Source: Octopus sinensis
Lineage: Eukaryota
DNA: 64,000 nt
Assembly (NCBI RefSeq): GCF_006345805.1
Contig: NC_043005.1
Span: 21,514,001 to 21,578,000, forward strand
Direction of reading: 5' to 3'
Below are positions 5,381-41,456 of the stretch, one piece after another. The number at the start of each line of letters is the position of its first letter. Position 1 is the first letter of the stretch. Under the pieces are notes generated by a model. That model was not told the DNA's origin. It saw nothing but the letters and a program-made list of their open reading frames with translations, and searched no databases. A program made the translations under genes and the position numbers.

Positions 5381-5620
5381 TTTCTAAAATCCATTTTGTG
5401 AAAGTAAAAGGTGCAGTTCTTGATATACCTGGAAAAATTTTGGAGAGTAATAAAAGTCTAACAGCAGATGTTTGCGCAGAAAGATGTTTGTCTAACAAAA
5501 ATTGTTTATCCTTTGAAATAACTGAAGAAACTGGAAAATGTTACTTATCAAAGGAAAGTGCAACTTCCTCCAAGAAAATAAAAGGAGCCAAAAGCAGAGA
5601 TTACTACCAACGAATAAATT
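5381..5620 (+). CDS. Exon B1, PAN/Apple-like domain
   Basis: ttccag|...aatt|gtaatt; 240 nt, phase 1-1; C-x3-C-x5-C-x-SF-x8-C-YL and DYYQR (CAERCLSNKNCLSFEITEETGKCYLS). Confidence 0.87.
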
Positions 5621-6169
5621 GTAATTATTCTTTGTGTTTTTCTTTTCCACTTATTTTGAAATTTGTAATTCCATTTCTACTTTGTGATACAGTTTTCTCT
5701 AATAGAATATCTACTTTTAAGTGGGGATAAATATTATCTCTTGATATTAATACTGCCTCTGTCACCAATATGTATTTTTCAACAAGCTAACTGGCTAATC
5801 ATGACATTAGCACCTGTTCTCACACTGTGATTCTGTATATTGCTGTAGCAGTCAAGTGTCCAACATTGACAAGACCAAAAAAGCTTGAAATGATCTAGTG
5901 ATCTCAGTGCTGGATATAGCAAGGATTTATCTCCCCACTAGCGATATAAACAAGAGTGCATTTTGCACCAAAAAGCCAATATGACTGTCTCTCATGGTAA
6001 CTGCTTCAGTAGACATTACTTTAGACTTTAAGTCAGATATTACACAAAGAATACCCCATGAGTAACTTAAGAAGTAGATCAGAAGACTTCATGGGAATTT
6101 CCACTTCTACTTCCAAGCTATATAATATTAAATTTTTTAGCAAGTATTACTGAAAAAATCTCCAATTTA

Positions 6170-6580
6170 TCCACAAATCTTTTATCATTTAGTTGTTGCA
6201 ATCATTTGATTGTGTCCATGTTGCTGCAACACCTTGAAGGGTTTTAGTTGAACAAATCAGCTCTAGGATTTATGTTTTAAAGCCAAGTACTAATTCTATC
6301 AGTCTCTTTTGCCAAACTACTAAGTTACAGGGTTGCAAATACACCACAAGCAGTTGTCAAGTGGTGGTGGGAGATGAACACACTCACACACACACATACA
6401 CACCTATATACAACAGGCTTCTTTCAGTTTCCGTTCTACCAAATTCACTCACAAAGCTTTGGTCAGCCAGGGGCTACAGTAGAAGACAATTGCCCATGCT
6501 TCCATGCAGTGGGACTGAACCTGCAACCATGTGGTTGAGAAGCAAGCTTGTTACCACACAGGCATGCTTGTGCTTACACA
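6170..6580 (-). mobile_element. tRNA-headed SINE (decayed)
   Basis: Minus strand begins with a tRNA-like head (ctgtgtggtaacaagcttgcttctcaaccacatggttgcaggttcagtcccactgc), then body and a (TG)n-type tract. A related 3' part lies near 34370-34580. Confidence 0.7.
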
Positions 6581-7699
6581 TATTTTTGATAGCATCTTTT
6601 ACAGTACAACAAGGTGTTATTTTGGATTGGCTTTAGAGAGAATATAGTATAAACAGAGCAACTTCCATCTCCACACCAAAACAGAATTAGGGAGGGATCA
6701 AATTTATTCTGTCTTCAGTTCAACCTAAATGTCTCAATGAACATGACCAGGAACTTTTTATCCTGTATTAGACACCATTTCTCAGAATGTGCATAGTGTT
6801 AAAGTTTGTAACTCTTCCAGCATTTCCACAACAGGAAATGCATACACGTATCCAGCTTTTATTCATGATGCCTAGTTATAACTGTCAAAATCCATCAAGC
6901 CCTCTGCTGAAAGAATTCTACCTTTCTATGTTAGTGGTATATAGAACAACCTTCACTCCAACTGATGGCTTCACAGTGAGACTTACTATCAGTAACTTCA
7001 AGAAAAGTTTCATTTAACTTATTTATTCTTTTAAGTTAATGTACAGGGGAAAGTTCACCTCTATTATAGTTTTATTTGGAGTGTCCAAGAACAGGAAAAT
7101 GATCTACCTAGCATAAGCACAAGCTTACTCACCTAATTATAAACAATGTTCTGTGTTCAAATATTATGTAATTATATAGAAATACCATGTAATCAGAATT
7201 TGAAAGAAAATATTAGAAAGCCATCTAATTCAGTATTTTTTATACAGACAATTTGTTATCAAAAGCACAATCGGTCCATGAGAATATGTTTTTGCATAGT
7301 CACCCATCTCAAAATTCATGTGCATTCTATTTTATCATAAGATGTACTTGGAAGCTCACCTAATTGTTTAGGTTGTACATAAATTATATGTACATTCCTC
7401 TTCTGCTAGTGTGCTTTTCTATAAGATTAAAGGAATTTTAACAACACTTGACACACTGGCTAACCACCTGCTGATCAGCACTTAGACAATACTAAATTAA
7501 TCCATTAGAAAAAGATATGCAAATGATACACAACTTAAACTTTGAAAGAAGTTTTCAAATGAGCCTGAAGATGTACTAAAACTCACATGAATTCCAAGTT
7601 GTAATTATGTGGATCAATTATCTGTTTATAATAAATTGTCCTTTTAAATTAAATTATGCACCAGATGCTATAATAATGTTTAATGTGTGTGTGAGATTC

Positions 7700-10600
7700 A
7701 TCATCATCATCATCATCATCGTTTAACGTCCGCTTTCCATGCTAGCATGGGTTGGACGGTTCAACTGGGGTCTGGGAAGCCTGAAGGCTGCACCAGGCCA
7801 GTCAGATCTGGCAGTGTTTCTACAGCTGGATGCCCTTCCTAACGCCAACCAATCCGAGAGTGTAGTGGGTGATTTTATGTGCTACCGACACAGGTGCCAG
7901 ACGAAGCTGGTGAACGGCCACGCTCGGATGGTGTTTTTTTATGTGCCACCGACACAGGTGCCAGACGAGGCTGGCGAATGACCACGATCGGATGGTGTTT
8001 GTTATGTGCCCACAGCACGGAGGCCAGTCGATGCGGTACTGGCTACGGCCACGTTCGGATGGTTGTCTTATGTGCCACAAAGATACAAATTCCATTGATG
8101 TTCATCTATTTTGATTTGGTTTGATTTTGGTTTGATTTTCACTTGCCTCAACAGGTCTTCACAAGTGTCACAAGAAGGAAGGTATGCACAGGTGGACTGA
8201 CTATGTCCCAGGTAGGGGCCACTGGTTATGGCCTCACTAGTTTTGCCGGGTCTTCTCACGCACAGCATACTTCCATAGGTCTCAGTCTCTAGTCATTTCC
8301 TTGGTGAGACCTAAAGTTCGAAGGTCATGTTTCACCACCTCATCTCAGGTTTTCCTGGGTCTACCTCTTCCACAGGTTCCCTCAACTGCTAGGGTGTAGC
8401 ACTTTTGCACACAACTATCTTCAGCCATTCTCATCACATGACCATACCAGCGCAAACGTCTCTCTTGCACACCACAACTGATGCTTCTTAGGTTCAACAT
8501 TTCTCTCAAGGTACTTACACTCTGTCGATTATGAACACTGACATTACACTGGCTTCATTTCTTGTGAGCTTACGCATATCCTCAGCAGTCACGGCCCATG
8601 TTTCACTACCATGTAGCATGGCTGTATGTACACATGCATCATACAGTCTGCCTTTTACTCTGAGCGAGAGGCCTTTTGTCACCAGTAGGGGTAAGAGCTC
8701 TCTAAACTTTGCCCAGGCTATTCTTACTCTAGCCGTTACACTTTCAGCACACCCACCCCTGCTACTGACTTGGTCACCTAGGTAGTGGAAGCTATCAACT
8801 ACTTCTAGTTTGTCTCCCTGGAACGTGGTAGAAGTTGGTCTCTGCACATTTCCAGTGTTTATTGCTCCTGAGCATCTGCCACAGACAAAAACTATTTTCC
8901 TAGTTAGCCTTCCTTTGACATTGCTGCACCTCTTATGTGTCCATAGCTTACACTTGGTGCACCTTATAGAGTTTCTACCTACACCTTTTTTACAGATCGA
9001 GCAGGGCCATCTACCTGAAGTCGTTTGTGATTGGTCCACCTTCCTACATATTAGGACTTTGGTTTTGGCTAGGTTGATTCTAAGGCCCTTCGATTCTAAT
9101 CCTTGTTTCCACACCTGAAACTTCTCCTCCAGTTCTGATAGTGACTCAGCAATTAGAGCAAGGTCATCAGCATAGAGGAGCTCCCAGGGGCATCCTGTCT
9201 TGAATTCCTCCGTTATTGTCTGAAGGACTATGATAAATAGGAGGGGACTGAGGACTGAACCTTGGTGGACCCCAACCTCTACCCGGAATTCTTCACTGTA
9301 CTCGTTGCCAACCCTCACCTTACTAGCAGCGTCTCTGTACATGGCTCGCACAGCTCTCACTAACCATTCATCTATCCCTAGTTTCCTCATTGACCACCAG
9401 ATAAGAGATCGGGGGACCCTGTCAAAGGCTTTCTCCATGTCAACAAAAGCCAGGTACAGGGGCTTATCTTTGGCTAGGTATTTCTCCTGCAGCTGTCTTA
9501 CCAGGAATATAGCATCAGTAGTACTTTTCCCTGGCATGAACCCAAACTGCATCTCATCTAAGCTAACTCTCTCTCTAATTAATTGGGCTATAACCCTCTC
9601 CGTAACCTTCATTACCTGATCCAGCAGCTTGATGCCCCTGTAGTTATTTGTATCTAGGGCATCACCTTTACCTTTGTAGCAGTTGACTATTATGTTGCTA
9701 CACCAGTCATTGGGTATGACTCCTTCGTGTATCACCTGGTTAACTATATGGGTGACTATGCTATAGCCGACACTACCAGATATTTTGAGCATCTCTGCAG
9801 TAATTCCTGATGGGCCTGGGGCTTTCCCTGTTTTCATGCTTGTAATTGCCTTAACTACTAAGGAACTGTTAACTCGGATTGCTGGTCCCTCTGTTGGGTC
9901 GACATTTGGCAGACTCTCTTTATCCCATTCATTTTCCTCATTCAGCAACCTTTCATAGTGGCGTCTCCAAGCCTCTCTCTTTGCATCCTCATTTAGCGCA
10001 AGTGAACCGTCATCCTTGCGAACACATTTCTCTCCTACCACGTCACGATTCTCTCTCACACACTGTCTTGCAACACAAAATACCTCAAGTCTTTCATCCT
10101 CATGGCGCAGGACATTGGCAAACTTTTTCTTATCTGCTTCCCCTCTGGCTAGATAGACCTGTCTCCTAGCTTCTCTTCTAGCAGTCTGATACACTTCCCT
10201 GCTACCACCGTTCTTCCAGGCCTTCCAAGCCTGTTTCTTTTGTCTAATAGCCCTGTCAACAATATTGTTCCACCACCACGTTATTTTGGGTCTTAAGGGG
10301 ACTTTGCACCAGCCACAGATCTGGTCAGTGGCTTTCAGCAGGTTGTCCCTCAGAAGCGTCCAGTTGTCTTCTACCCCATGTGTAGCTATACCCCCTTCCA
10401 TTTCGTCAAAGGCATCAAGTAACATATCTCTAAATCTCTGTCCATTCACAGGGTCTTTAAGCTTCCAGACCCTTCTTCTCCATGTTGGTCGTCTTCTAGT
10501 TGCCCTCTTAGTCCTGATCCTAAAGTCACTAACTACCAGTCTATGTTGTGGGGTGCATTCTTCGCCTGGGAAGGTTTTGGCATTTATAAGCAGCCATCTT

Positions 10601-11023
10601 TCCCTTTTTCTGGCAAGGATGTAGTCGATTTGGCTAGTATGCCGGCCCAATCGGTAGGTGACCAGGTGGCTTGTCGGTTTCCTGAAGTTAGTGTTGCAAA
10701 CCATAAGACTATTTGCATCGCAGAACTCCAGCAGCCTAGTTCCCTCCTCGTTGCGGGAACCATAACCATAGCCTCCATGTACGCCATGGAAGCCACCAGC
10801 ATGTCGTCCAACATGCCCATTGAAATCACCAGCCACAAAGAGAAGGTCCCTGTCGTTCATCAATGAGGTGGTCTACAGTAGGGTGTCATAGAAACTGTCT
10901 TTCTGTCCATCGGGTAGCCCTGGCTGAGGGGCATAGGCCGATATAATGGTTGCTAATCTATGATGAAGCACTATTCTAATCTTAAGTATTCTGTCACTTA
11001 CTCTGATTACCTCAATTACTTTA
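7700..11023 (-). mobile_element. RTE-clade LINE, 5'-truncated within the endonuclease, relatively young
   Basis: Continuous EN(partial)-RT homology. One TAG near 10873 and one short deletion/frameshift near 8550. Full 3' UTR and (TGA)n tail at about 7700-7722. Removing it restores homology with the intron upstream of exon C3. Confidence 0.95.
8515..10863 (-). pseudogene. RTE ORF remnant, 782 aa (EN C-terminus, RT, C4HC3 finger)
   Basis: AGDFNGHVG, SQIDYIL (APE endonuclease); KAPGPSG, YRGIKL, FVDMEKAFD, GVHQGSVLSP, YADD (RT). Confidence 0.93.
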
Positions 11024-11061
11024 TGAAATGTAATTCTTGTTTTCTTTCTTTTTTTATCTAG

Positions 11062-11295
11062 CTGATAAAGATATTTTAAAATTTGAAAAAACTTCCATAC
11101 CAAGAGAAGATACATTTAAACGGCTGGAAAATGTGACCGTAAAGGAGTGTGACCATGCTTGTCATCAAACTCCAGGATGTAACTCTTATGAGTATAATGA
11201 GAAAGCTAAGTTCTGTGATCAAAGTGATGCGACTCACCTGACTCATGACCTTCAACCAGATCAAAAGGATTGGGATACTTATGTCATTAACCCAG
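11062..11295 (+). CDS. Exon C1, PAN/Apple-like domain (type 2)
   Basis: tatctag|...cccag|gtcagt; 234 nt, phase 1-1; CDHACHQTPGCNSYEYNEKAKFCDQS...WDTY. Confidence 0.87.
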
Positions 11296-11466
11296 GTCAG
11301 TAGAGTGTTTTCATTTTATTTTATTATGCATGTACTTGCATGTATCTGTGTGTTTGTGTGTATTATTTACATATACATACATGTGTTTGTGCAATATATA
11401 CATGTATATATGTATACAGAGGCAAATATGTAAATAAACAAATTAGACAGATTAAATATATTAAAT

Positions 11467-11620
11467 ATCTATTAGAATAAAAGCGAAATTCTGTCTGTCT
11501 GGGACCCTTGTATCTCAGTCTACATTCGCTCTACAAAGACATATTATAGCTTGGGGAATCTGAATGATCCCAGGATTGAATATTTGCATCTTCATTTAGT
11601 TCTTTAACATCTGGTTTTGG
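11467..11620 (+). mobile_element. Helitron-like non-autonomous element 5' end (fragment)
   Basis: a|tctattagaataaaagcgaaattctgtctgtctg resembles the 5' end at 24215. No matching 3' end was located. Confidence 0.45.
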
Positions 11621-12009
11621 GATCTGATTCAAAAACATTTGGCTTACTACTTCTTGCAGATAAAGTTTGGCTGATTCACACCATCCTGGTTAATGTTTGT
11701 CAGATGATGTCAGATAAATAGCATTGCTTCATTAATTTTACATTGAGATAAGGACTTTGGGACGAACTGGCCAACAGTTAGATTTCAGCTTGGGACTGGA
11801 ACAATAAAATGATTGCATTACAGAATTAATTCTCATCCATCTTTTACCTCTGATTAAACATCATCAGAACATATAGTCATTATAAATAAATTATAGTCAT
11901 GCTATTTAGCTCTTTGTGGTTTGGGGACACAGGCCCAATTTACCCTTAGCCAGAGCTAGCTTAAAATTTTGCACAGAGTGCAGCTTTTAAGCTAGTCTTT
12001 AGATATAAG

Positions 12010-12560
12010 ACAAAGGATGTTTGTGTGTAATACATATGCATTTCAACAGGTTTCAACCGATTTGCTCTCTTTTTTCTCTTTGTTTATTTCTTTCTTATTT
12101 CTCTTTTTCTCATTCTCCATTTCTCTTGCTTACACATATTCTCTCTCACTCTCTAATAGTTCCTCTCTTTTTGTCTGTGTCTGTTTCTTTCACTCTCTCT
12201 CTCTCTATTTCTCTCTCTATCTTTATCTCAGTACTTACTAGCTTTAGTCTACAAATTGACTTCCATGTATTTCAATTGGTCATGAGTAACAATCTCTGTG
12301 ATGGCTTTTGTATGTTCACCATGATTATTTTAAATTTTTGTTCACCCATTGTGTTTAAATTCAGCTTTTCCAATTCTGCCTAAAAATTTACTTCAGTGTA
12401 TTTCAATTTTTTCATGTTTAAAAATCTTTGTCTTTGCAGTATTTGTACATTCCCCTACAACATTACTTATTTAAAATTTTTTGCACTTCATCTATTTAAA
12501 TACACTATTCTCTTGCAACCTCCACAATAGTTCCTCTCTTTTAGTCTATGTCTGTTTCCT

Positions 12561-12611
<51 letters not shown>

Positions 12612-12613
12612 CC

Positions 12614-12645
<32 letters not shown>

Positions 12646-13740
12646 CTCTCTCTCTCTCTCACCCACACACTAACTTTTGTCTACAAATGGATTTCTTTGT
12701 ATTTCAATTAGTTGTGTGTTAAAATCTCTGCTGTTATGGTTTTTGTACATTCTCCCAGAAAAATAATTTAGTTATTTTTAATTTTTGTTCATCTAGTGTT
12801 TTTAAATTCAGTTTTGCCACATCTACCAAAAAATTGATTTCAGTGTATTTCAATTTTGTTGTGCATAAATATCTTTGTCTTTATGGTATTTCATGTTCTC
12901 CCTACAACATTACTTATTTTAAATTTTTGGCACTCCATCTATTTAAATACACTATTTACATTTCTCCCTCTATCAAAGAACGTTGTACGAGCAGTTGTGC
13001 ATGTGTATACAGCCGATAAACCTTTATAATTAACCAATGAGATTTTAACCACACCACTGAGCAGTCATGCATTAGGAAAAAGCTATCCTAAAGCAGTTCA
13101 AGTTTTTTCACTCAAGCTATTTTCTTCTAGAGCTTTAGGCACACAAACGGGGTTTGTAAGTTCTGTCTGCAAATTGACTTCCTTGCATATAAATTAGTTG
13201 TGTAAAAATTTCTGATGTTACAGTTTTTGTACGTTCTACCTGAAAAATAATTTAGTTATTCTTAAATTTTATTCACCCAGTGTGTTTAAATTCAGTTATG
13301 TCACATATACCTAAAAATTGATTTCAGTGTATTTCAATTTTGTTGTGCATAAATAGCTTTGTCATTGTGGTATTTGTATGTTCTCTCAACAAAGGATGTT
13401 TGTGTCTCTGATTGTGTAGTACGTATAGATTTCTACAGTTTTCAACCGATTTTCACCAAACTTTACACACACATTACTTATGTGCTAAGAATCATCATGC
13501 AATATAACATTTTGCCCAGAGCTCTTGCTTAAACCATGAAAAACAGTCTTTTACATGGGTTTTTCTCTAAAAATTTATGCAGTTTTCAACTGATTTTTTC
13601 CATTTTCTCTCTATATATTTTTTGAACTTCGTGTAGTACAGTTTTATATGTTTTTCGCAAAAAATTAACTGTATTGTATGTTTTAGAGATTTTAAATTTC
13701 AATATTCTTTCTTTTTTATATGTATTTTCATTAATTTCAA
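12010..13740. repeat. Internally triplicated ~300-450-bp degenerate repeat with (TC)n/(TATC)n tracts, probably Helitron-like
   Basis: The block aaattcag...aaaaattgatttcagtgtatttcaatttt...tctttgtc recurs near 12355, 12805 and 13285. aaaggatgtttgtgt...ttcaaccgattt recurs at about 12012 and 13390. Confidence 0.6.
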
Positions 13741-13949
13741 GTCATTATATACCCATGTGGGGTGGTGTAGGAAGGTCAGTGGAGTTATGGGGTTATTAAG
13801 ACAGGAAATGGTGAGAGGAGAAAAGATAGTTCAGGAAGAGTGAGGGATTAATAATGAGGGTACTGAGGGAGATTGCAGTAGAAGTGGAGAGTTGGAAGAT
13901 TATGACCTAGGTTGATGTGGTAGTGGAACAATGCTTTAGACAAGGCTAT

Positions 13950-16150
13950 TAGAGCAAAGCAACAGGCCTTGAAGGACTGAAAGAGTGGGAGTAGCAGAAA
14001 ACTGCATCAGATAACCAGAAGGGAAGCTAGGAGACAGGTATATCTAGCCAAGGAAGAAGCAGAAAAAAAGAAGTTTGCCTATGTTCAGTGATGTGAAGAC
14101 CAAAGACTTGAAGTGTTTCAGATTGTAAGACAGTGTATGAGAGAAAATTGTGATGTCATAGGAGAGAAATGTGTCTGCATGGATGATGGTGCACTTGCAT
14201 TTAATGATTCTGCAAAGAAAGAGACTTGGAAATGCCATTATAAAAAGGTGCTAGATGTGGAGAATGAATGGGAGAAGGAAAGTGTGCCTAATATTGACCC
14301 AACTGAGGGACCAACTATCTGGAGAGGGTCATATCTCAATTAATTAGGGAGAGAATTAGAGTAGATGGGATACAGTTCAGATTTGTGCCAGGCAGGAGCA
14401 CAACTGATGTTCTATTCCTAGTTAGGCAACAGCAGGAGAAATATCTAGCCAAAAATAAACCCCTATACCTGGCTTTCATTGATATGGAGAAAGCCTTTGA
14501 CAGAGACCCCCCACTCTATTATCTGGTGATCAGTCAGGAAGCTAGGGATAGATGAGTAGTTGGTGAGAGCTGGACAGGCTATGTACAGGGATGCTGTCAG
14601 TAAGGTGAAGGTTAAGCAAGGAATTCAGAGTTAAGTAGGGGTTTACCAAGGATCAATTCTCAACCCACTCTTGTTCATCATAGGTCCCCTGGCAATAACA
14701 GGAATTCAAGACAGGCTGCCCCTCGGAGCTCTTGTATTTTGATGACCTTGCTCTTATACCTGAATCACTACCAGAAGTAGACAAGAAATTTCAGACATGG
14801 AGATATGGTATGGAATCAAAGGGCCTTAGAGTTAACCTAACAAAAACTAAAGTCTTAGTAAGTATAGGAGGGCAGACAAATCACAAATGCCTTCAGGTAG
14901 ATGGTCCTGCTCGATCTGTAGGGAAGTTATTTGTAGAAACTCCATAAGATGTCCTCAGTGCAAGCTATGGACACATAAGAGGTGCAGCAATCTCAGAGGA
15001 AAGTTGACTAGGAGTATAGGTTTTGTGTGGAGAAGGTGCATGGGTACAATAAACACCAAAAATGTACAGAAAATAGACTCCATCACCTGCCAGGTTGGTA
15101 AGTTAGAGGTAGTAGATAGCTTCTGTTATATAGGTGACCAAGTTAGTAGCAGAAGGGAATGCTCTGAGAGCATAGCTGCAAGAATAAGAATAGGGTGGGC
15201 AAAGTTCAGAGAGCTCCTACTTCTGCTGGCAACAAAGAGCCTCTCCCTCAGAGTGAAAGGCAGACTGTATAATGCTTGTGTGCAAGCAGCTATGCTATAC
15301 ACCAGTGAAACGTGAGCTGTGACAGCCAAGGGCATGTATAGACTTGAAAGGAATGAAGCTAATATACTTTGCTGGATGTGTAATGTCAATGTTCATGTTC
15401 AAATGTAAGCACCTTGAGAGAAAAGTTTGGCATAAGAGGCATCAGATATGGTGTGCAAGAGATAGATGACTGTGCTGGTATGGTCAAGTGGTGTGTATAG
15501 ACAAGGACAGTTGCGTGAAGAAGTGCTAATCTCTAACTGTGGAGGGAACTTGTGGTAGAGGTAGACCCAGGAAGATATGGAATGAGGTGGTGAAGCATGA
15601 TCTTTGAAATGTGGACTTCACTGAGGCAATGACTTAGTGACCAAGACCTTTGGCGATACAGCATGCTTGATAAGAGCTGTCAAGCTTAGTGATATCATAG
15701 CCATGGATGATGCTGGTGTCACATAACTGGCACCCCTTCTTGTGATACATAAAAAGTACTTTTTTAGTGTTGGGCTTCATGGAGGCAAGGTGGCCGATGC
15801 TAGTGGCATGTAAAAAGCATGCTTCAAGTATTGGGCCACATGGAGGCAATGACAAATGACCAAGATTTTTGGTATTATGCTGTGCTTGAGAAGAAGACCC
15901 ATCAAACCAAGTGAAATTGTAATTACAGCAGATACTGGTGTCATGCAAATTGCACCCCTGCCAGTGGCATGTAAATGCACATATTACACCCTTGGAGTGG
16001 TTGGTGTTTGGAAGTACATTCAAGCATAGAAATCATGCCAAATAATACTAGAGTCTGGTACAACCTTCCAGCTTGCCAGCCCTGGTAAAACCATCCAACC
16101 CATGCCAACATGGAAAATGGACGTTAAATGACAATGAAGATGAAGATAAC
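13950..16150 (+). mobile_element. RTE-clade LINE, decayed
   Basis: ORFs at 14113, 14732 and 14887 (VRQCMREN, YFDDLALI, CSICREVICRNSIRCPQCKLWTHKRC). Tail catggaaaatggacgttaaatga near 16110-16135. Confidence 0.9.
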
Positions 16151-16443: not shown

Positions 16444-16614
16444 CTTATTCAAGTATTAATTGTGGGCCTCCCAAAGATATTGTTGGTACATCAAAGTCCT
16501 ACAAAACTACTGCCTATAAATCTGAAGTACTCTATACTTGCTCAGATGGAGTACAGCTAAAGTCAATATGTGAAAAAGACAACAAATGGACTCCAGTAGC
16601 GTCTTCTTGTAACG
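16444..16614 (+). CDS. Exon A2, Sushi/CCP-like domain
   Basis: tttcag|...aacg|gtaaca; 171 nt, phase 1-1; YSSINCGPPKDIVGTSKSYKTTAYKSEVLYTCSDGVQLKSICEKDNKWTPVASSCN. Confidence 0.85.
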
Positions 16615-19612: not shown

Positions 19613-19852
19613 ATCCTCAGCTCCATTTTGTGAAAATAAAAGATGCAGCTCTGGATGTACCTGGGAAAACATTGTTGGATAAGGAAGATGTAACAGCAGA
19701 TGAATGTGCAAAAAGATGTCTGTCTGATGAAAGTTGTTTATCATTTGAAATAACCAAAGGAAATGGAAAATGTTACTTATCAGAGAAAACCGCTGCTACC
19801 TCCAAGAAATTAAAGGGAAACAAAGACAGAGATTACTACCAACGATTAAAGC
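19613..19852 (+). CDS. Exon B2, PAN/Apple-like domain
   Basis: ctttag|atcctcag...aagc|gtaatt; 240 nt, phase 1-1; CAKRCLSDESCLSFEITKGNGKCYLS...RDYYQRLK. Confidence 0.87.
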
Positions 19853-27030: not shown

Positions 27031-27264
27031 TTGATGACAAGCCTTTCATGATGAAAAAAGTTAGCATACCAAAGAAGGCTACAATAAAAGAGCTTCAGGG
27101 TATGAAATTAAAGGAGTGTGACGAAGCTTGCAGTCAATATGCAAGATGTAACTCTTATCAGTACAATAAGAAAGAGAAGATATGTGATCTGAGTCATGCG
27201 ACTGAGTTGAACAATGAACTTATGCCTAATGATGGAAGCTGGGATCTATACATTATTAATCCAG
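27031..27264 (+). CDS. Exon C2, PAN/Apple-like domain (type 2)
   Basis: ttccag|...ccag|gtcagt; 234 nt, phase 1-1; CDEACSQYARCNSYQYNKKEKICDLS...WDLYIINP. Confidence 0.87.
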
Positions 27265-28260: not shown

Positions 28261-28269
28261 AACCGGCTA

Positions 28270-31810: not shown

Positions 31811-31828
31811 TATATATATATATATATA

Positions 31829-32216: not shown

Positions 32217-32380
32217 CATATATCACATGCTCACGTGGTCGCACCAGTTGATCCTGTCATTTCTTATCACACACGAACTTCTCCACTGGACTTTCTACCT
32301 ATCTACCCTTTATGGATTCTCTTTTGGACATTTACCCTCCAGCTGCACCTCTCCTACATACGGGTCACTGTGGACTCTTC

Positions 32381-32425
<45 letters not shown>

Positions 32426-32569
32426 TTAATAATAATAGAAAATTTGACAGTGCAAATATTCTAGTGTATATATATATATTATATTATATTATATTAAAAC
32501 AAGAGATTGGACGATTTTTAGTACTATTTATTCACCATTGCATGTGTGGCATCTGCTCTATAGGAGTCT

Positions 32570-33020
32570 CATCATCATTTTCATTTAACATTTGTTGTCC
32601 ATGCTGGCATGGTTTAGACAGTTTGATCAGGGTGTGTACTTTAAGGGGCTGCACCAGATTCCAGTCTTATTTGGCATGGTTTCTACAGCTGGATACCCTT
32701 CTTAATGCCAACCACTACAAGAGTGTAATGTGTGCTTTTACGTGCCATTTGCATGACAACAGCATCTGCCATGACTATGATTTCACCCAACTTGATGGAT
32801 CTTTCTCCTCAAACACAACATATTGCCAAAGGTCTTAGTAATTTGTCATCTCCTCTGTGAGGCCCAGTGCTTGAAAGCTGCTTTTTATGTGCCACTCATA
32901 TGGTTGCTGGTTCCATGACACCAGCATTGGCCACATTGCCTCCATGAGGCCAAATACTCAAAAGGGGCTTTTTACATGCCACTGGTACGACTGCCAGTTG
33001 TGTGACACCGGTAACAACCA
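32570..33020 (-). mobile_element. RTE-family 3' end, decayed
   Basis: catcatcattttcatttaacatttgttgtccatgctggcatgg and the downstream UTR motifs shared with 15650-16140. Confidence 0.75.
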
Positions 33021-33278
33021 CAACTATATAGATACAATTGCTACTGAGATGAACACATTCATCATTATAGCAATAGTATCTATGTAAAAGGTTTGTATCT
33101 AAGTGTATGATGAAGCATGAATGTATGTATATTTGTATGTTATATTCATATATGTATGAAGATATATATATATATATATATATATATATCAAATAATATT
33201 AGGGAGTATAACTCCAAACTTACAGGGAAAAATTCAATTTAGTATTAAATCAAATTTCCCAGTATAAATATATAAAAT

Positions 33279-33527
33279 ATAAATTAGAGATAAAACCACT
33301 ATTATGCAAGTCACACAGTGATAGACATAAACCAATACATAAATAACCAATATATATATATATATATATAAATATATAAATAATGTTTTTTTTTTAAATA
33401 TATAACTTATAACTAGATCTCATAAACATTATTTATATATTTATATATATATATATTGGTTATTTATGTATTGGTTTATGTCTATCACTGTTTGACTTGC
33501 ATAATAGTGGTTTTATCTCTAATTTAT
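33279..33527. repeat. Inverted repeat (~105-bp arms, ~35-nt spacer)
   Basis: ataaattagagataaaaccactattatgcaagtca...aataatgttt versus aaacattatt...tgacttgcataatagtggttttatctctaatttat. Confidence 0.9.
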
Positions 33528-35417
33528 ATATATATATATATATATGTACTTGCTCATATGTATATGTGGCTATGTATATGCAGGAGTATATGTGCATATA
33601 ACAATTTCAGTCATTTAAGATGACATCTTCATACTGGAAAAAAATGGAAAGAAAAGTTGAAATAAATAGAAACTTCCATAATATCATTTGTGAAAGTTCC
33701 TATATTTCCTTTATAAAAGTCACATGGGGCTGTACTTCCCATCCTACTGATTGGTGCTTGTTGGTAGTGATGGCCATGGTTAATAAAAGTGCTTGCAGGC
33801 AAGTGGTGGTAGAAGGGATAGCAGAAAGTGTAGTAATGTTAGCAATTGTTGACTCTCTTCATTGATGGGAATGGTAGCAGGTGTGTTTGTTGTTGGCAGG
33901 AGAAGGAAAATAATAGTAGTAGTAGTAGCAGGAACACTTAGGTTTCCTTATGGCTTATAATGGTGTTTAATCTGGCTAGTAGTTGTGGTATTGGCTCATA
34001 GCATTTTTCAGTCTATGGCCTAGCAGTCATTGTTGTTGTGGTACCAGTAAGGGTTGCAGTATTGTTGTGATGGTTGTTGTCCTCCTTTCTCCACCATAGA
34101 AATTACAATGTGGTCAATATTTTATAATGAAGAACATTTCTTTGTTAATGTTTTAACATATACTTGTATTATCACCAAATTTATTGAGAGGGAAAATTAA
34201 AAAGCTAGGTTTTTTGTAACCTGTACACACGTCCAAATGTTCACTGGGTCCTGTTTTTCTATGTTCCCCTATTTTAATTTGTGCTCTGTGCTGGTTTGTT
34301 CATTGACATAGAGTATTTATTATTTGTCCAATATGATCCTTACCACATCCTAAGCATGTTATTATGTGTGTGTCTTTGTGTTTTGTCTTTGTCCCCACCT
34401 CTGCTGTGAAACTGGAGTTGGTTGGATTATGTCTCTGCGACTTAGCAGTTTGGCATGACAGAGCATTAGAATAAGTATCTCACAAATATAATTACTGAGT
34501 CCAATTCATTTCACTAAAACCCCTTCAAGGTAGTGCCCCAGTATGACCACATTCCAATGTCTGAAACAAGTAATGGATAAAAACTTACAAAAACACTCCC
34601 TTCCACATTGTCTCTCACTTTTTCATCTCCCTACTCTCCTTCCTTTTTGCCAGGTTCTCTCTCTGTTACTTTTTCACTTTGCTTCTCTCTATATATGGTG
34701 AAGATGCTGACGACCGCTTTGTTCAAAGCCTCCCTTGACCTCAAGTGGCCTGAACTCTTTACATGAACACCACCCTGTACTTAACTCCATGTCCCCCTAC
34801 ATGGCCTTGCTATTTGCTTTTGAGCCAAATTAACTAACTAACTAACATATCTCTCTCTAGCTCCAAGATTTACAACTTATTTTATTATTTTATATTTATA
34901 TATTTTACATTTTTTTCCTATTTAATGTTGTCCATTTTAGTTATTCCTTTCTCTTTTCATTGATTACAGGCCTCTCTTATTTTTTACCCCTCTCCCTTTC
35001 TGTCCGTTTCTTTCAGGCATTTGCTCTCAATCTACTTCTCTCAGCATACTTCTAACAACTGTACAACTTCACACATTTGATCTCCGTAATATAATGCAAT
35101 AAAATTTTCCCTTAATGATCCGTTTGTGGTTTGGCATCCAGTTGTACTTGGAACATCCAATTCATCCAATTTAAGCAACCACAATACTTGAGTGTACAAG
35201 GGGAACAAATAATATGAAATTGTGTTTATCATAATTTCTCCTACATTTGCTCTGTATATCATAACCAGTTTACTATACTGCATGCATGTATATTGTGCAA
35301 ATGATTCATTTTATTTTAGCTAATATCTTATATTCTAAATATGTAATTATCTCCTCATTCTTCTCTTCTTCCTAACATATACTCACAATTGACACTAGTT
35401 TCTTTTATCAATTACAG

Positions 35418-35585
35418 TTGTCACAAAAGTTGATTGTGGAGCACCAAAAGTTGTTGTTGGTGCATCTAAATCCTACAATACTACTAACTACAAATCTGAA
35501 GTGATCTATACTTGTCAAAAAGGAGAAATATTAAAGGCAACATGTAAAGAGAACAGGAAATGGTTTCCAGTAGTGTCTTGTAAAG
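35418..35585 (+). CDS. Exon A3, Sushi/CCP-like domain (one-codon deletion)
   Basis: attacag|...aaag|gtaatg; 168 nt, phase 1-1; VTKVDCGAPKVVVGASKSYNTTNYKSEVIYTCQKGEILKATCKENRKWFPVVSCK. Confidence 0.85.
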
Positions 35586-37829
35586 GTAATGTAAATAGGG
35601 TCTTTCTTTTTGACTCTGCCTCAGTAATTTTGTTTTAGCTTTGAGTTCCAAGTTTATGTCAGAGGAAGTCTGACTTTGTCCATGAAAATTTGCATTGTGT
35701 TTGTAATTGGTAGGAGAGTGAGAGCTAGTTATCCTCAGATCAGAGATGTTTCTAAATGCTTGCAACACAGTGTACTTCATTAAAGATATTTAAGAGCCAG
35801 GTAATGGTAATAATTTGGTTGATGGGTTAAGTCTTCACCAAAGAACAGAAAGTGAGGAAGTGCATTCTCTCCTTCAGGTTTCTGCTAGTCTCTATCCACC
35901 ACTAAATTTCATCCACAATGCATAGTTGTGAATCAGAATTTTAGCAACACAGCCACAAGTCTACAGAATATGATATTCTTGTTAAGTACACTTATTACTT
36001 CCATGAATATACCTCGCCTTAGTTTTGGAGTTTTTCTCTTAATTTTTAACTTAACCTTTCTCGTCCAGTCTTTGTTTCATCCTCTGAAACACTGTACAAT
36101 ACAATGCACTGAATTTTTATTTACTAGAATTCAGCAATCATCCAAAATTTCTGATACTCTAATGGTCCATTCCACCATCCTAAATTGTAATGAAACAAAT
36201 AATAATTATGGTTTCTGATGGAAAAAGAGCCAGTACTTTTGTATAGAAAATTGTTAGTCAGTATCCTTACATCCAATACTGGACTACTGTTTTGTGTTGT
36301 TGACTCACCCCTTACAAGAATGAAATGTAAAGTTAACATGGGCTGGATTTCAACTGCAAACAATAAAATCCTGAATACATCCCATAAAAAATCACTTCCA
36401 AAGCTCTAATTTGTATACATGTATATATTTAATATAAAAATGAGAACGATGATGTGATTTTCTAGAGTGTTGAAGAATCTTTGTCTAAAACTAATTGAAG
36501 AAACCCACTGTCAAAGACCACCATGAACTCCAAGAAGTGCCCTCTCCATTTAATATTCTTTGACCAACAGGTTTTAAGCAGTGTTGGACCCATCCACCCT
36601 CAGGTCACTTTCAATAATTTTCCTTTAGGAGAATATCTTCCTATCCATCCTCATCAACTTTACAAGTGAAACTTTAAAAATACAGATTAGGGATTATCTA
36701 AAGAAGAAAGTCCCTATTGTCAGACCCTTGAATCACATCCATCACACAACTGCTTTTGCTATAGCTAGCAGACAGAGGAAAATGAACTTTTCTACTTGGT
36801 TAAAAGAGGATGTGAGGCAGTCATAATAATGGACTTGAATAACAGCTGGATCTGTCTCACACATGATACCTGCTATTTGACATAAATTTACAAGTCAATA
36901 ATGCCTGGACATTGAACAAGTGCATATAAAATTAATTTGTTCCACTGTGAACATCTTGAACAGCACTGTCTGTTAGAATTTCTATGACTACATTTTATTT
37001 TGGTTTCATAGACCTATTTGATAACACTACCAAGGGCTACAGGAAGTTTCCCATAGTATTCCATGGCCAAGAAGTTCTTTGAAACAAACTTCCCGCCTCA
37101 TTCTCATCAAACCCCAGAATATTGCTGAGAATATCAATGATCTTCCCCTCAATTAATCTTCTATAGATTACATAGCCCAATCAAATTTGATTTGGTGTAC
37201 TTACGATTACATTAGGTAATCTGACTTTCCCATTTTTAAAATTGTGTATGTGATTGAGAGATATTTTGATATTTATTGCATTAATATACAGGCACATTGA
37301 CACAGTTGCTCTTACTGGACGTGGACCACAAGGTTCCATAGAATTTCATGACATAACTGTTTCTCTCACAACTAGCTTATAAGAAAATATAAATACCACC
37401 ACATTGTAATCAATTACGTATTCATTATTTAAGTACATGGCCAAAAATATTTAGAAAAAAGAAATTAGTTTATGTGAAATTCATGTCATTCTGAAGGTCA
37501 CTGTCTATATAAAGTGATCTGAATCAAATCCAGAATGTATTATCAAAAATATTGGTAACATCAGCAATAATTATAAATATTTGTATTGACAATGGATTGA
37601 GAGGATCATCAGAACATCAGACGAAATATGTTGTGGTATTTGTTCTGGCTCTTTGACATTTGAGTTCAACTATATTTTTCCAGTGCCAATAAAATAAAAT
37701 ATCTGTCAAATATAGGAGCCAATTTAATCAATCATCTCCTACCTCAAATTTTTGTTCATTTTGCTTCATTAGAAATTATGGATGTTGTTTTTGTTGTTTA
37801 CATTTATCTCAATCTTACTTTAATTCTAG

Positions 37830-38069
37830 TTACTGAGAGAAAATTTTTGAAAGTAAAAAATGCAATGCTGGATGTACCTGGAAAAACTTTGTGGAGAAAG
37901 AAAAATGTAACAGCAGATGCCTGTGCAGAAAAATGTTCATCTGACACAAATTGTTTATCATTTGAGATAACTAAAGTAAGTGGAAAATGTTACTTATCGA
38001 AAGCAACTGCAGCTTCCAACAAGAAAATAAAAACAGCCAAGAACAGAGATTACTACCAACGAATAGATC
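37830..38069 (+). CDS. Exon B3, PAN/Apple-like domain
   Basis: ttctag|...gatc|gtaatt; 240 nt, phase 1-1; CAEKCSSDTNCLSFEITKVSGKCYLS...RDYYQRID. Confidence 0.87.
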
Positions 38070-38599
38070 GTAATTATTTTTTGTGTTTCTCTTTACCTCA
38101 TTTTCTGAAATTTTTGATCCATTTGTACTTTGTAGTTTATAGAAAACCATTTCTGTAAAGGCATTGATAGCTTTATCTATAGGGACAAACATAAACACAT
38201 TCATGAAATAAGAAATTGTGGGAAAAATACTGTTAAGGCATTCTCATATAGCATTTGTTTATCTTGAAGACTTTTCTGTAATATGTTTTCAATCATTTCA
38301 AAAATAGGTATTTTAGACACATCTTGCAGTATTACAAGGTGTTAGCTAGAATTGGATTTCGTAAGAAGTCAATAAAAAATTAGCATTCTCCACCTCCATA
38401 GTTGAAGGCTGTAAGAAAGAAGAAATGTGAAATGATTTTTTAGTCACTGACCTGCATTATTATTAGGAGTTTTACAAAACATCTATATCAACCAATGAAA
38501 TGGTGCAGGTGCTGAACATTGTGTGGGGACCAAATCACTAGGACTTGCTCTACTCTGTGAGCTGTATTTCCACCTACCAAATATCTTCATTCCTGTCTT

Positions 38600-39600
38600 G
38601 AAAGCCATTCACTGCAATTTGCTGAAGACTGGAAGGATTTGGTGGGAATAGTGGCACACAGAAGATGGAGCAGAACAAGAGGGTTTCCATAGAATATTTC
38701 AGACCCAGAACTCTCTCTACAATATAGAGTTAAAGATTTTGGCAAATGTGCTTGTCAAGATTTTGGCACTTGTAACAATATCCACCTTATGCAAAACATC
38801 ATACATCACATCGAAAAGAGTTCTAGATTTGATGGGGCATTAGATTAGTGAAAAGCATTTGACAAGGTGGACCATTACTACCTAGCAGCTGTCCTAGGAC
38901 CTGTTAAGTTTGGTCCTTTCTTCAGAGGCTGGATCACCACAATGTACATTGGTATCAATTAAATGTGCATATCAAAATATTTAGCATTAGAATATTAGAA
39001 TATTAGCATTAAATGTTTGGTCTGTAAAGGATGCCTTTGCTGCTGAGAATGGAGAGTTTGAGGGTTATCCTACTTGGTATGGGCTACAGGAGGTCCATGT
39101 TGTCTTACATGGACAATATCACTGACAAGGTACTGGACACTTTCTATATGGATGGCTATACTACTGAAAGAGAATCACATACGTGCTACAGCAAATTGGT
39201 GGTCTTGCAACAAGGCACTCGGAGAGGCAAGCTCATGTTGGCCAACGGTTATGTGTGCCTCTAAACTAAGTGTCCAATGGAAGTCCTCAAAATCTGCTTT
39301 GGATCTCTAGGTTGATAATAACTGGATATTTGTTGCAAGCAAGGTGGCCAATCTCACTCAGAAATAATCTGAGAAGCTGTCCCTGAATGGTTGGGCTGAA
39401 GTGATTAAAGTATACATTGCTTTGGTGATGAACTACCATCTGATCATAATACCTCAAGAACGACCTCATCAGACTAGAGTGGATACTTTTCCAACTCTTT
39501 TAGAAGAAACAAGTTCCACTTATCAAAAAATCCATCTGCTGATAACAGCTACCCACAACAGTCTTCTGATGCCATCCTTGGTGGTGCACAGACATGCTTA
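38600..39600 (+). mobile_element. L1/Tx1-clade RT fragment, decayed
   Basis: aaagcatttgacaaggtggaccattactacctagcagctgtc reads KAFDKVDHYYLAAV...FGPFFRGWITTMY. ORF 39031 contains SYMDNIT (degenerate YADD). Confidence 0.7.
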
Positions 39601-39654
39601 AAGGCTAACACATCTGCAGAAATATTTGAACCACTGTGATGGTGAGGACATTAT

Positions 39655-40830
39655 AATCATCATTTAACATCCATTCTTCATGCTGGCATAGGTTGGACAG
39701 TTTAACCAGAGCTGGCCAACTGGAGGGTTGCCCAGGCTCCATTTTGTCTGTTTTGACATGGTTTCTTTCTATAGCTGGATGACCTTCCTAATGTCAACAA
39801 CTTTACAAAGTGTACTTGGTGTTTTAAAGTAACACTATCCCAGGCAGTGTCACATGGCACTGGCATGGGTGCTATTACTTGGCATTGGTACAGGCACTTT
39901 TACATGGCACAGGCATGGGAATTTTAATATGGCACCAGCACAGGCTCTTTTATATGCCACTGGGACGGGTGCTTTTATATGGTATCAGCATGGTTGCTTT
40001 TGCATGGCATTGGCATTGGCATGGGCACTTATCATGGCACCAGCACAGGAACTTTTACACAGCACTGGCACAGGTGCTCTCATGTGGCACTAGCATGGGT
40101 GCTTTTACATGACACCAGCATGGGCGCTTTTATGTGGCACCAGCACAGGCAGATTTGACTGGCACAGATGCTTTTGCATGGCACCAGTACCCATGAGTTC
40201 ACAAGACTGGGACCTCTCAGAGAGAGGGATATAAAAGCTATGCCTGTACATGTGGACAGCCATGTTTTACTTAGCTTGATGTGTCCCCTTAAGCACAGCA
40301 AATTGCCAGAAATCTAGGTCCCTTGTCATCTCCTCCATAAGGCCCAAATTCTGAAGGTCCTTTTACACCACTTAGCCTTACATCTGTGGTTTATCCTTTC
40401 CACACATTCCCTTCACATTTAGAAATCAGTTCTTCTTGATGCAGCTGTACTCATCCATATACATCACATAAACATATCAGTGCAGCCCTCTCACTTGCAC
40501 ACGTCTGATGCTTTGTATACCCAACTTTTCTCTCAAATCACTTGCCCTCTGTTGTACATGAACACTAACATTACTCATCCTTCAGAACATGCTGGCTTAA
40601 TTTTTTTCAAGCTTTCACACATTCTCAGATGTCACAACCCATGTCTCACTGCCATGTAACATACCTATTCATACACAGACACCATACAATCTATCTTTCC
40701 CAATGAGGAAGAGGCTCTATGTTATTAACATAGGTAGTAACTCTCAGAACTTTGCCCAGCCCCATCTTATTCTAGCAACTATGCATTCAGAACTATTTCC
40801 TCCACTCCTAACTTTGTCACCTAAGTAATG
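39655..40830 (-). mobile_element. RTE-clade LINE 3' fragment with ~25-bp minisatellite in the 3' UTR
   Basis: Tail catcatttaacatccatt; RT C-terminal remnants at 40300-40830; repeats of gtgcttttacatggcaccagca at 39850-40190. Confidence 0.8.
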
Positions 40831-41222
40831 TAGATAATACATTTGTACACCCATCTTCTGATGGTGTGCTTTTGTTTAAGATTAAATGATCATCTTTTGC
40901 ACTGTGTTTAGATTCGACAAAAGAACACCATTAGAAAATTAGGCACAAATAGATTTCATGCAACTTAAATTTTGAAACAAGGTTTCAAATGAGCCTGAAG
41001 ATATTCTACATTCACAAAACTCTGACAAAATCGTTATTTTGTGGATCAATTATTTGTTTATAATGCAGGCATGTCCAACCTATGCTTGCATGGAAAATGA
41101 ATGTAAAATGTTTATGATGAAGATGACCATTTAAAACAAATTATGCAACAAATTCTATATAATATTTAATATGTGTATGAATATAAAATATCTTTCTTGT
41201 TTTTCATTTCTTTTTTATCTAG

Positions 41223-41456
41223 CCGATGATGATCTTTTTACTTTTAAAAGAACTGCCATACCAAAGCATAATACATTTGGTCGGATTAAAGGAGTAAGTT
41301 TAAAGGAGTGTGACCGTGCTTGCCTTCAAATTCCAGGATGTAAATCTTATGAGTATCATGAAAAATATAAATTCTGTAATCCATCTAATGAGACTCACCT
41401 GACTTATGACCTTAAACCCAACAAAAATGGATGGGATATACATATCATGAACCCAG
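41223..41456 (+). CDS. Exon C3, PAN/Apple-like domain (type 2)
   Basis: tatctag|...cccag|gtcagt; 234 nt, phase 1-1; CDRACLQIPGCKSYEYHEKYKFCNPS...WDIHIMNP. Confidence 0.87.

What the first reader, a model, noticed from the sequence alone, without database searches (positions are those of the whole stretch)
5381..41456. Paralogous exons show replacement excess: candidate diversifying selection
Hand counts from the sequence. C1 vs C3: 36 of 77 codons change amino acid, while the 41 conserved codons hold only 5 silent differences plus one AGT/TCT Ser switch. B1 vs B3: 29 of 79 codons change, with 7 silent differences in the 50 conserved codons. A1 vs A3: 35 of 56 residues identical. All Cys and the reading frames are kept, while the introns carry many indels. 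Inference: the fold is conserved and the surface is diversifying, as seen in immune-recognition and gamete-recognition proteins.
Basis: partly seen in the sequence, partly recalled or inferred. Interest (0 to 1): 0.72.

Follow-up and report, generated by a model that had tools for sequence, protein, structure and literature searches.

The report
Octopus Sushi–PAN–PAN exon array, near-neutral divergence
The repeated exons are single-domain modules of a giant, uncharacterised octopus extracellular protein array that evolve fast on a fixed cysteine scaffold, but the many amino-acid changes are about what near-neutral drift gives, not a demonstrated case of diversifying selection.

Summary
C1/C3 differ at 36 of 77 codons with 6 silent codons, B1/B3 at 29 of 79 with 7, and A1/A3 share 35 of 56 residues. 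All Cys and reading frames are kept.

The "excess" arises because about 79% of codon sites are non-synonymous. Corrected pairwise dN/dS is 0.33-0.97 and never exceeds 1. Pooled unit 1 vs unit 3 gives 0.74.

The 12 exons are Sushi (A) and PAN (B, C) domains. All are phase 1-1 and splice into one 837-aa open frame. They form one copy of a 13-exon higher-order repeat. A1 is the last Sushi domain of the Octopus sinensis LOC118764742 model; the other 11 exons match no annotated protein.

Standard site tests on 49 exon copies flag a positive class for B (p about 1e-5) and A (p about 0.003), but not C. That signal vanishes once among-site rate variation is allowed (B p=0.12, A p=0.85). In simulations with no positive selection, the standard test was "significant" in 13 of 16 runs. 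The rate-aware test detected real selection of the fitted strength in 12 of 12 runs.

Best reading: a strongly constrained core (dN/dS about 0.03-0.15) and the remaining sites near neutral.

The parts
4614..4784 (+). A1: Sushi/CCP-like domain exon (171 nt, phase 1-1). It is the last Sushi domain of the O. sinensis LOC118764742 model.
   Evidence: AG/GT boundaries and frame. 100% identical over 56 aa to P0006 residues 2582-2637.
4863..4882 (+). Short terminal coding piece of RefSeq model XP_036361601.1 (tail EECLYP plus stop), 78 nt after the A1 donor. Possibly only an artefact that closes the gene model.
   Evidence: ECLYP found in frame at window 4865, preceded by AG. C-terminus of P0006.
5381..5620 (+). 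B1: first PAN-domain exon of unit 1 (240 nt, phase 1-1)
   Evidence: Pfam PAN_1 45.5 bits against a cut-off of 21.4. AF2 pLDDT 91.9 and Foldseek match to the HGF N domain.
11062..11295 (+). C1: second PAN-domain exon of unit 1 (234 nt, phase 1-1)
   Evidence: Pfam PAN_1 31.7 bits.
16444..16614 (+). A2: Sushi exon of unit 2
   Evidence: Best Pfam Sushi stretch in the spliced product.
19613..19852 (+). B2: PAN exon of unit 2
27031..27264 (+). C2: PAN exon of unit 2
35418..35585 (+). A3: Sushi exon of unit 3 (168 nt, with a one-codon deletion). Two Sushi domains of P0006 carry the same ...EVSCK ending.
37830..38069 (+). B3: PAN exon of unit 3
41223..41456 (+). C3: PAN exon of unit 3
46910..47080 (+). 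A4: first Sushi exon of the A-A-B-C unit that starts the next higher-order repeat
49810..49980 (+). A5: second Sushi exon of the A-A-B-C unit (82% aa identity to P0006 2366-2420)
57601..57840 (+). B4: PAN exon of the A-A-B-C unit (90% aa identity to P0006 2423-2500). The matching C exon should lie beyond the window end.

Best explanation
The window lies inside a very large tandem array on an Octopus sinensis chromosome. Each exon encodes exactly one extracellular domain, in the order Sushi (A), PAN (B), PAN (C).

All exons are phase 1-1 and a multiple of 3 in length, so any run of them splices into one open frame. Unequal crossing-over can therefore add or remove units without breaking the protein. 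The array is organised as a 13-exon higher-order repeat, [A-A-B-C][A-B-C][A-B-C][A-B-C]. The window holds one such copy, starting at the last exon of the LOC118764742 model.

After duplication the modules diverged under a two-tier regime.
- About 15-45% of codons are strongly constrained (dN/dS about 0.03-0.15). These are the four Cys of each domain, the Sushi Trp, and core hydrophobic and Gly residues.
- The remaining codons evolve at about the neutral rate (dN/dS about 1), with some sites simply faster than others.

Shown: domain identity, exon structure, array organisation, the dN/dS values, and loss of the positive-selection signal under a rate-aware model. Inferred: that the exons are expressed as one long secreted or adhesive binding protein, and that expansion was by unequal crossing-over.
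For: - Exon anatomy and the single 837-aa open frame.
- Pfam PAN_1 in 7 stretches plus Sushi.
- PAN fold of B1.
- A1 and the EECLYP tail are identical to XP_036361601.1.
- P0006 domain layout is BC ABC AABC ABC ABC ABC AABC ABC ABC ABC AABC A. The same pattern occurs in O. bimaculoides.
- Pairwise dN/dS is 0.33-0.97.
- Orthologous exons give dN 0.111, dS 0.188 and intron K80 0.217, so dS is neutral-like and dN is about half the neutral rate.
- M0 dN/dS is 0.56, 0.75 and 0.67.
- M1a+G fits better than M2a, and M2a+G adds nothing: 2dlnL is 0.34 (A), 4.3 (B) and 0 (C).
- In simulations the standard LRT exceeded 5.99 in 13 of 16 null data sets. The rate-aware LRT detected real selection in 12 of 12.
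- Cross-validation in the window copies gives pN/pS 0.13-0.15 for the core class and 0.9-1.2 for the 'neutral' class.
- Constraint on the reading frame: there are no stops or frameshifts, although introns show about 0.066-0.08 frame-shifting indels per substitution. A neutral exon has only a 0.12-0.17 chance of staying stop-free over one pairwise distance.
Against: - The maximum-likelihood estimate for B still contains a class with dN/dS about 2.6 at about 16% of sites, even with rate variation. It is non-significant (p=0.12).
- Standard M1a/M2a, M7/M8 and M8a/M8 tests are significant for B and A. They are robust to codon-frequency model, full branch-length optimisation and split trees.
- Flagged B sites lie mostly in loops or at strand ends of the model, as a binding-surface hypothesis would predict.
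- The codon models were my own implementation on NJ trees of mixed paralogues and orthologues. Alignments are short (56-79 codons).
- There is no expression evidence for the 11 unannotated exons.
Confidence: 0.62

Rival explanations
1. Diversifying selection. A subset of surface-loop residues in the Sushi and first PAN domain is repeatedly driven to change. The array would then be a repertoire of binding modules with different specificities, as in immune-recognition or gamete-recognition proteins.
For: - M1a/M2a 2dlnL is 23.4 (B) and 11.8 (A); M7/M8 gives 21.0 and 10.4; M8a/M8 gives 20.2 and 9.7.
- The result is stable across codon-frequency models. For B it is also stable with separate trees for halves and thirds.
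- Flagged B sites (1-3, 12, 17, 21-22, 36, 49, 68, 71) sit mostly in loops or at strand ends.
- Average dN/dS is very high for Cys-rich domains.
Against: - No pairwise dN/dS exceeds 1.
- Exon C shows nothing under any model.
- The signal is lost once sites may vary in rate. Such variation alone produces LRT values of 11-46 in 13 of 16 null simulations. A real effect of the fitted size would have been found in 12 of 12.
- Sites called positive from the non-window copies have pN/pS 0.5 and a raised pS (0.76) in the window's B copies.
- Window-only tests are non-significant for B and C. For A they are numerically unstable (fitted dN/dS of 220 on about 3 sites).
Confidence: 0.17
2. Decaying, unexpressed repeat copies. 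The 11 exons after A1 have dropped out of the transcript and drift neutrally, which would explain dN/dS near 1.
For: - None of B1 to B4 is in any annotated protein. The best database identity is 56-62% although the window is O. sinensis.
- The RefSeq model stops 78 nt after A1, and no gene is called within 10 kb downstream.
- dN/dS for B is not significantly below 1 in pairwise tests.
Against: - All 11 exons keep AG/GT, phase and an open frame.
- There are no frameshifts, against an expectation of roughly 20 from the intron indel rate. There are no stops.
- Core codons show pN/pS 0.13-0.15 among the window copies themselves.
- Any loss of function would therefore have to be very recent.
- Repeat arrays are commonly split or truncated by annotation pipelines. 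O. bimaculoides and O. vulgaris models do join equivalent units.
Confidence: 0.1
3. Artefact of comparing non-equivalent repeats. Gene conversion or unequal exchange among units scrambles the phylogeny, which inflates apparent replacement rates and site-test statistics.
For: - Window copies have no clean one-to-one partner in the other loci.
- NJ trees mix species and positions.
- The A signal disappears when the alignment is split into thirds with separate trees.
Against: - Pairwise dN/dS needs no tree and gives the same picture (0.33-0.97).
- Clean O. bimaculoides vs O. sinensis orthologous pairs give dN/dS 0.59.
- The B result survives partitioning.
Confidence: 0.08

Closest known systems
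Octopus sinensis LOC118764742 (XP_036361601.1, 2643 aa) and its neighbours: LOC118764741, O. bimaculoides LOC128248838, LOC128248840 and LOC106869390, and O. vulgaris CAI9728792.1. All are annotated 'uncharacterized protein' or 'SVEP1-like'.
   Same: They show the same Sushi-PAN-PAN exon triplets and the same A-A-B-C/A-B-C higher-order pattern. They lie on the same chromosome. A1 and the model's C-terminal tail are encoded in the window.
   Different: Exons B1 to B4 of the window are in none of these models. Identity to the nearest annotated copies is only 56-90%.
PAN/apple module: N domain of hepatocyte growth factor, N-terminal domain of plasminogen, leech antiplatelet protein, factor XI apple domains
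   Same: Pfam PAN_1 hits are above the cut-off. The domain has a four-Cys core. The AF2 model of B1 superposes on the HGF N domain (TM 0.72-0.75) and on plasminogen (TM 0.77).
   Different: Sequence identity is only 20-29%. There is no kringle or protease partner. The domain is repeated dozens of times and alternates with Sushi domains. No ligand is known.
Long Sushi/CCP-repeat proteins (CR1, SVEP1 type)
   Same: One domain per phase 1-1 exon, with four Cys and an invariant Trp. Amplification is tandem. Distant hits in the representative search are CR1-like Sushi arrays.
   Different: Here Sushi is the minority domain, regularly interleaved with two PAN domains. Sequence similarity to CR1-type proteins is about 30% and limited to the A exon.
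GON-Abd-1 of Abdopus aculeatus (UniProt R4G2C1). From memory it derives from a posterior salivary ('venom') gland transcriptome study; I did not verify this here.
   Same: It contains one B-type PAN, one C-type PAN and one A-type Sushi domain in the same order. Identity to the window units is 43-45%.
   Different: It has a signal peptide and a C-terminal GON domain. Neither is encoded in the window or in the three related loci examined.

Membership tests
PAN/apple domain (Pfam PF00024 PAN_1) | Profile match above the curated cut-off | tested here: met
   B1 scores 45.5 bits and C1 31.7 bits against a cut-off of 21.4. The spliced product has 7 stretches, E=5.7e-57.
PAN/apple domain (Pfam PF00024 PAN_1) | Conserved disulfide core (four Cys) kept in all copies | tested here: met
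   Cys columns are invariant in 15 B and 16 C copies.
PAN/apple domain (Pfam PF00024 PAN_1) | Alpha/beta hairpin-loop fold | tested here: met
   B1 AF2 model has pLDDT 91.9. Foldseek matches the HGF N domain, plasminogen PAN and LAPP with prob 1.00 and TM 0.69-0.78. The C exon was not modelled.
Sushi/CCP/SCR domain (Pfam PF00084) | About 60 residues with four Cys and an invariant Trp between Cys3 and Cys4, encoded by one phase 1-1 exon | tested here: met
   C6, C32, C42, W48 and C55 are invariant in 18 copies. Exon phases.
Sushi/CCP/SCR domain (Pfam PF00084) | Profile match above the curated cut-off | tested here: inconclusive
   The spliced product scores 32.7 bits against a cut-off of 20.7, with A2 as the best stretch. 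A1 alone gives no hit at E<=0.001.
Genes under diversifying (positive) selection | dN/dS above 1 between copies after multiple-hit correction | tested here: not met
   All 19 window pairs give 0.33-0.97. Orthologues give 0.59.
Genes under diversifying (positive) selection | A site class with dN/dS above 1 that survives realistic null models | tested here: not met
   The class is significant under M1a/M2a and M7/M8 for A and B. It is not significant with among-site rate variation. The standard test gives 13 of 16 false positives under that null. C is never significant.
Genes under diversifying (positive) selection | The same sites are selected in independent copies | tested here: not met
   B sites called from the non-window copies show pN/pS 0.5 in the window copies. 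For A only 2 sites were called, with tiny counts.
O. sinensis LOC118764742 gene model | Exons of the window are part of the annotated coding sequence | tested here: inconclusive
   A1 and the 20-nt tail are in the model. The other 11 exons are not, and no transcript data were available.
GON-domain PAN proteins (GON-Abd-1 type) | C-terminal GON domain and N-terminal signal peptide | tested here: not met
   tblastn of both parts against the window and three related loci returned hits only for the N-terminal query, all weak (E>=0.19), and none for the GON part.

The most novel reading that the evidence does not exclude
The array is an octopod-specific, exon-modular repertoire of PAN/Sushi binding units. 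A minority of loop residues, chiefly in the first PAN domain, would be under real diversifying selection. Unit number and composition would vary by unequal exchange, or by alternative splicing of the freely combinable phase 1-1 exons. That would make it a new kind of variable recognition or adhesion system, for prey, pathogens or gametes, in a cephalopod.
Probability: 0.12. Interest if true: 0.65.

Novelty: new member of a known kind. Interest (0 to 1): 0.3.

Why it matters
This is mainly a cautionary result. Counting replaced against silent codons, and even the standard M1a/M2a and M7/M8 tests, suggests positive selection here. A null model with rate variation among sites explains the signal.

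What remains is modest but real. The window shows that a Sushi-PAN-PAN array with a 13-exon higher-order repeat continues beyond the 152.7-kb LOC118764742 model, through at least 11 intact but unannotated exons. Related arrays lie about 0.5 Mb apart on the same O. sinensis chromosome. The gene models in this region are therefore probably fragments of something larger.

The family is uncharacterised. In the search I ran, close relatives came only from Octopus species. It evolves at roughly half to three-quarters of the neutral rate. That makes it a reasonable candidate for lineage-specific biology once expression data are examined.

Tried and rejected
1. My first extraction of O. sinensis exons was flawed. 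The file L002.fa holds two records (L002 and L003), and hits from one were read on the other. This produced spurious 'no clean exon' copies. The resulting idea of many pseudo-exons was dropped. Extraction and all main tests were redone. Searches used the older, smaller but valid set.

2. Biopython's ML dN/dS timed out, and YN00 failed on several pairs. I used NG86, LWL85 and my own GY94 code instead.

Surface exposure could not be computed because no coordinates are returned. Only secondary-structure context was used.

4. I first treated P0004 as evidence for a spliced mRNA. It is a UniParc entry of unknown origin, probably an old gene model, so I withdrew that argument.

5. I looked for a clean orthologue of the window in O. 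bimaculoides. Genic DNA is only 70-80% identical and positional orthology is inconsistent.

6. The DNA of the closest paralogues, the preceding higher-order repeat inside LOC118764742, could not be fetched because the gene range is too long.

7. Literature searches for this family (octopus PAN/Sushi, GON domain, venom gland) found nothing relevant.
Full report
**What is there**

The window is AT-rich animal DNA full of SINE and LINE copies. An all-against-all comparison of its open frames found three families of short conserved coding pieces, all on the + strand.

- A (171 nt; A3 is 168 nt): A1 4614-4784, A2 16444-16614, A3 35418-35585, A4 46910-47080, A5 49810-49980.
- B (240 nt): B1 5381-5620, B2 19613-19852, B3 37830-38069, B4 57601-57840.
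- C (234 nt): C1 11062-11295, C2 27031-27264, C3 41223-41456.

Every exon is flanked by AG...GT, starts and ends in phase 1, and is a multiple of 3 long. Joined in genomic order, the 12 exons give one 837-residue open frame with no stop. tblastn finds no further copies in the window.

Pfam identifies B and C as PAN domains: 7 stretches with E=5.7e-57, and B1 and C1 each score above the cut-off on their own. A is a Sushi/CCP domain. An AlphaFold2 model of B1 is confident (pLDDT 91.9). It matches the N domain of hepatocyte growth factor, the plasminogen PAN domain and leech antiplatelet protein (TM 0.69-0.78).

**Where it comes from**

Homologues are octopus proteins annotated as uncharacterised.

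The last Sushi domain of O. sinensis XP_036361601.1 (LOC118764742, 2643 aa, gene range 152.7 kb) is 100% identical to A1. Its odd C-terminal tail, EECLYP-stop, is encoded at window 4863-4882, just after an AG. The window is therefore O. sinensis, or a near-identical member of the O. vulgaris complex. It begins inside the 3' end of that gene model.

That protein's domain order is BC ABC AABC ABC ABC ABC AABC ABC ABC ABC AABC A. This is a higher-order repeat of 13 exons. The window is the next copy: ABC ABC ABC AAB, with the C exon expected beyond the window end. O. bimaculoides shows the same pattern.

Exons B1 to B4 are in no annotated protein. The best identity is 56-62%. No gene is called within 10 kb downstream of LOC118764742. 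The window and three related loci encode no signal-peptide exon and no GON domain.

The 'paralogous exons' are thus internal domain repeats of one very long array, not separate genes.

**The observation**

All Cys are invariant in the 49 copies aligned.

Introns carry frequent indels. Among window flanks there are 176 events per 2197 substitutions, 144 of them not a multiple of three. Between O. bimaculoides and O. sinensis introns there are 72 events per 713 substitutions. The exons have no frameshift and a single one-codon deletion.

A neutrally evolving exon would stay stop-free over one pairwise distance only 12-17% of the time. The reading frames are therefore clearly maintained by selection.

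**Is there a replacement excess?**

No. Non-synonymous sites outnumber synonymous sites about 3.9 to 1, so many replaced codons and few silent ones are expected.

- Nei-Gojobori dN/dS is 0.33-0.76 for A pairs, 0.62-0.80 for B pairs and 0.59-0.97 for C pairs.
- Unit 1 vs unit 3 pooled gives dN 0.254, dS 0.341 and dN/dS 0.74, with Fisher p=0.16.
- Seven orthologous exons of O. bimaculoides and O. sinensis (501 codons) give dN 0.111, dS 0.188 and dN/dS 0.59.
- Their flanking introns give K80=0.217 over 3797 nt.

Synonymous sites therefore behave neutrally, and replacements accumulate at about half the neutral rate. Among the window copies, exon and alignable-intron divergences are similar.

The rates are very high for disulfide-rich domains, but they are not above neutral.

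**Site models**

I extracted clean copies from the window, one O. bimaculoides locus and two further O. sinensis loci: A n=18, B n=15, C n=16. I fitted GY94 codon models with my own code, using F3x4 frequencies and NJ trees.

| Test | A | B | C |
|---|---|---|---|
| M0 dN/dS | 0.56 | 0.75 | 0.67 |
| M1a vs M2a, 2dlnL | 11.8 (p=0.003) | 23.4 (p=8e-6) | 0.5 |
| M7 vs M8, 2dlnL | 10.4 | 21.0 | 2.7 |
| M8a vs M8, 2dlnL | 9.7 | 20.2 | 2.0 |

The A and B results survive other codon-frequency models and full branch-length optimisation. For B they also survive separate trees for halves and thirds of the exon.

**Why I do not accept that signal**

1. With the window copies alone, B (2dlnL 3.9) and C (0.0) are non-significant. 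A is 'significant' only with an absurd dN/dS of 220 on about 3 codons.

2. Cross-validation. I classified sites from the non-window copies and then measured them in the window copies.
   - The constrained class is confirmed: pN/pS is 0.13-0.15.
   - The 'neutral' class gives 0.9-1.2.
   - The 'positive' B sites give pN/pS 0.5 with a raised pS of 0.76. They are fast at silent positions too.

3. Adding a gamma distribution of overall rate among sites improves the null greatly. M1a+G fits better than M2a for all three exons. It also removes the need for a positive class: M1a+G vs M2a+G gives 2dlnL of 0.34 (A), 4.3 (B, p=0.12) and 0 (C).

4. Simulation on the B tree.
   - Data generated under the fitted M1a+G model, with no positive selection, gave a standard M1a/M2a statistic above 5.99 in 13 of 16 replicates. 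The 13 values ranged from 11 to 46, which covers the observed 23.4.
   - Data generated under the fitted M2a model were detected by the rate-aware test in 12 of 12 replicates (7.1-22.9). All of these lie above the observed 4.3.

The standard tests are therefore unreliable here, and the rate-aware test had the power to see an effect of the claimed size.

**Interpretation**

The best-supported picture has two tiers.
- A constrained scaffold: roughly 15-45% of codons, depending on exon and model, with dN/dS about 0.03-0.15.
- The remaining codons drift at about the neutral rate, with rate heterogeneity among sites.

This sits in an array that grows and shrinks by unequal exchange of freely combinable phase 1-1 exons. 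A small positively selected fraction in the first PAN domain cannot be excluded. The point estimate remains dN/dS about 2.6 at 16% of sites, and the flagged sites are mostly in loops or at strand ends.

The alternative that the unannotated exons are dead copies is unlikely. Their frames and splice sites are intact and their core codons are constrained. No transcript evidence was available, however.

**Limits**
- The codon models are my own implementation, not PAML or HyPhy.
- Trees are NJ trees of mixed paralogues and orthologues.
- Alignments are only 56-79 codons long.
- The simulations used 12-16 replicates.
- The closest paralogues, inside LOC118764742, could not be retrieved as DNA.
- I found no published description of the family.

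Noticed in passing
window 8518-10872 (- strand), in the B1-C1 intron; fragments at 16-1331 (+) and 13981-15312 (+): A non-LTR retrotransposon with an uninterrupted 785-aa frame (Pfam RVT_1, plus a weak PHD finger). Copies about 90% identical occur in the other O. sinensis loci, so the element may be young or active. Older, broken copies of the same family lie at the window start and between units 1 and 2.
   Followed up: partly
window 4037-4282 and 7698-7943: A 246-nt inverted repeat, 95% complementary, made of SINE-like elements with GATGAT tails. The two arms bracket exons A1 and B1. Such a pair could promote inversion or hairpin formation around these two exons.
   Followed up: partly
window 3082-3994 and 3920-4112; inverted partial copy at 7873-8010: A 351-nt tandem repeat (2.6 copies, 93% matches) that ends in a 62-nt tandem repeat (3.1 copies). 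It sits just upstream of A1 and is apparently part of the same SINE-like or satellite element.
   Followed up: no
window 4785-4882: The RefSeq model XP_036361601.1 ends through a 78-nt 'intron' after A1 and a 20-nt terminal coding piece (EECLYP-stop). Nothing here shows this terminal piece to be a real exon. The model's end may be an annotation artefact, and the array may be transcribed further.
   Followed up: partly
window 35418-35585 (A3) and P0006 Sushi domains ending ...EVSCK: A3 lacks one codon before its last Cys. Two Sushi domains of LOC118764742 end in the same shortened way (...PEVSCK). If these occupy the same position in their repeat copies, the deletion predates the duplication of the 13-exon repeat and marks positional homology between copies; I did not check their positions.
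   Followed up: partly
L001 (O. bimaculoides CM046610.1, 88.28 Mb); L002 and L003 (O. sinensis CM016867.1, 21.26 and 20.76 Mb): Arrays of the same three exon types occur at loci about 0.5 Mb apart on one O. sinensis chromosome. In O. bimaculoides the 1133-aa neighbouring gene is also PAN/Sushi. The cluster may therefore span hundreds of kilobases and be split arbitrarily into several gene models.
   Followed up: partly
window 39841-40151: A degenerate 50-nt tandem repeat (6 copies, 66% matches) in the B3-C3 intron, next to a SINE copy.
   Followed up: no
session files (/data/L002.fa): Technical point, not biological. Two loci fetched in parallel were written into one FASTA file, which silently corrupted my first exon extraction. 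This is worth knowing for anyone who reuses the scripts.
   Followed up: yes
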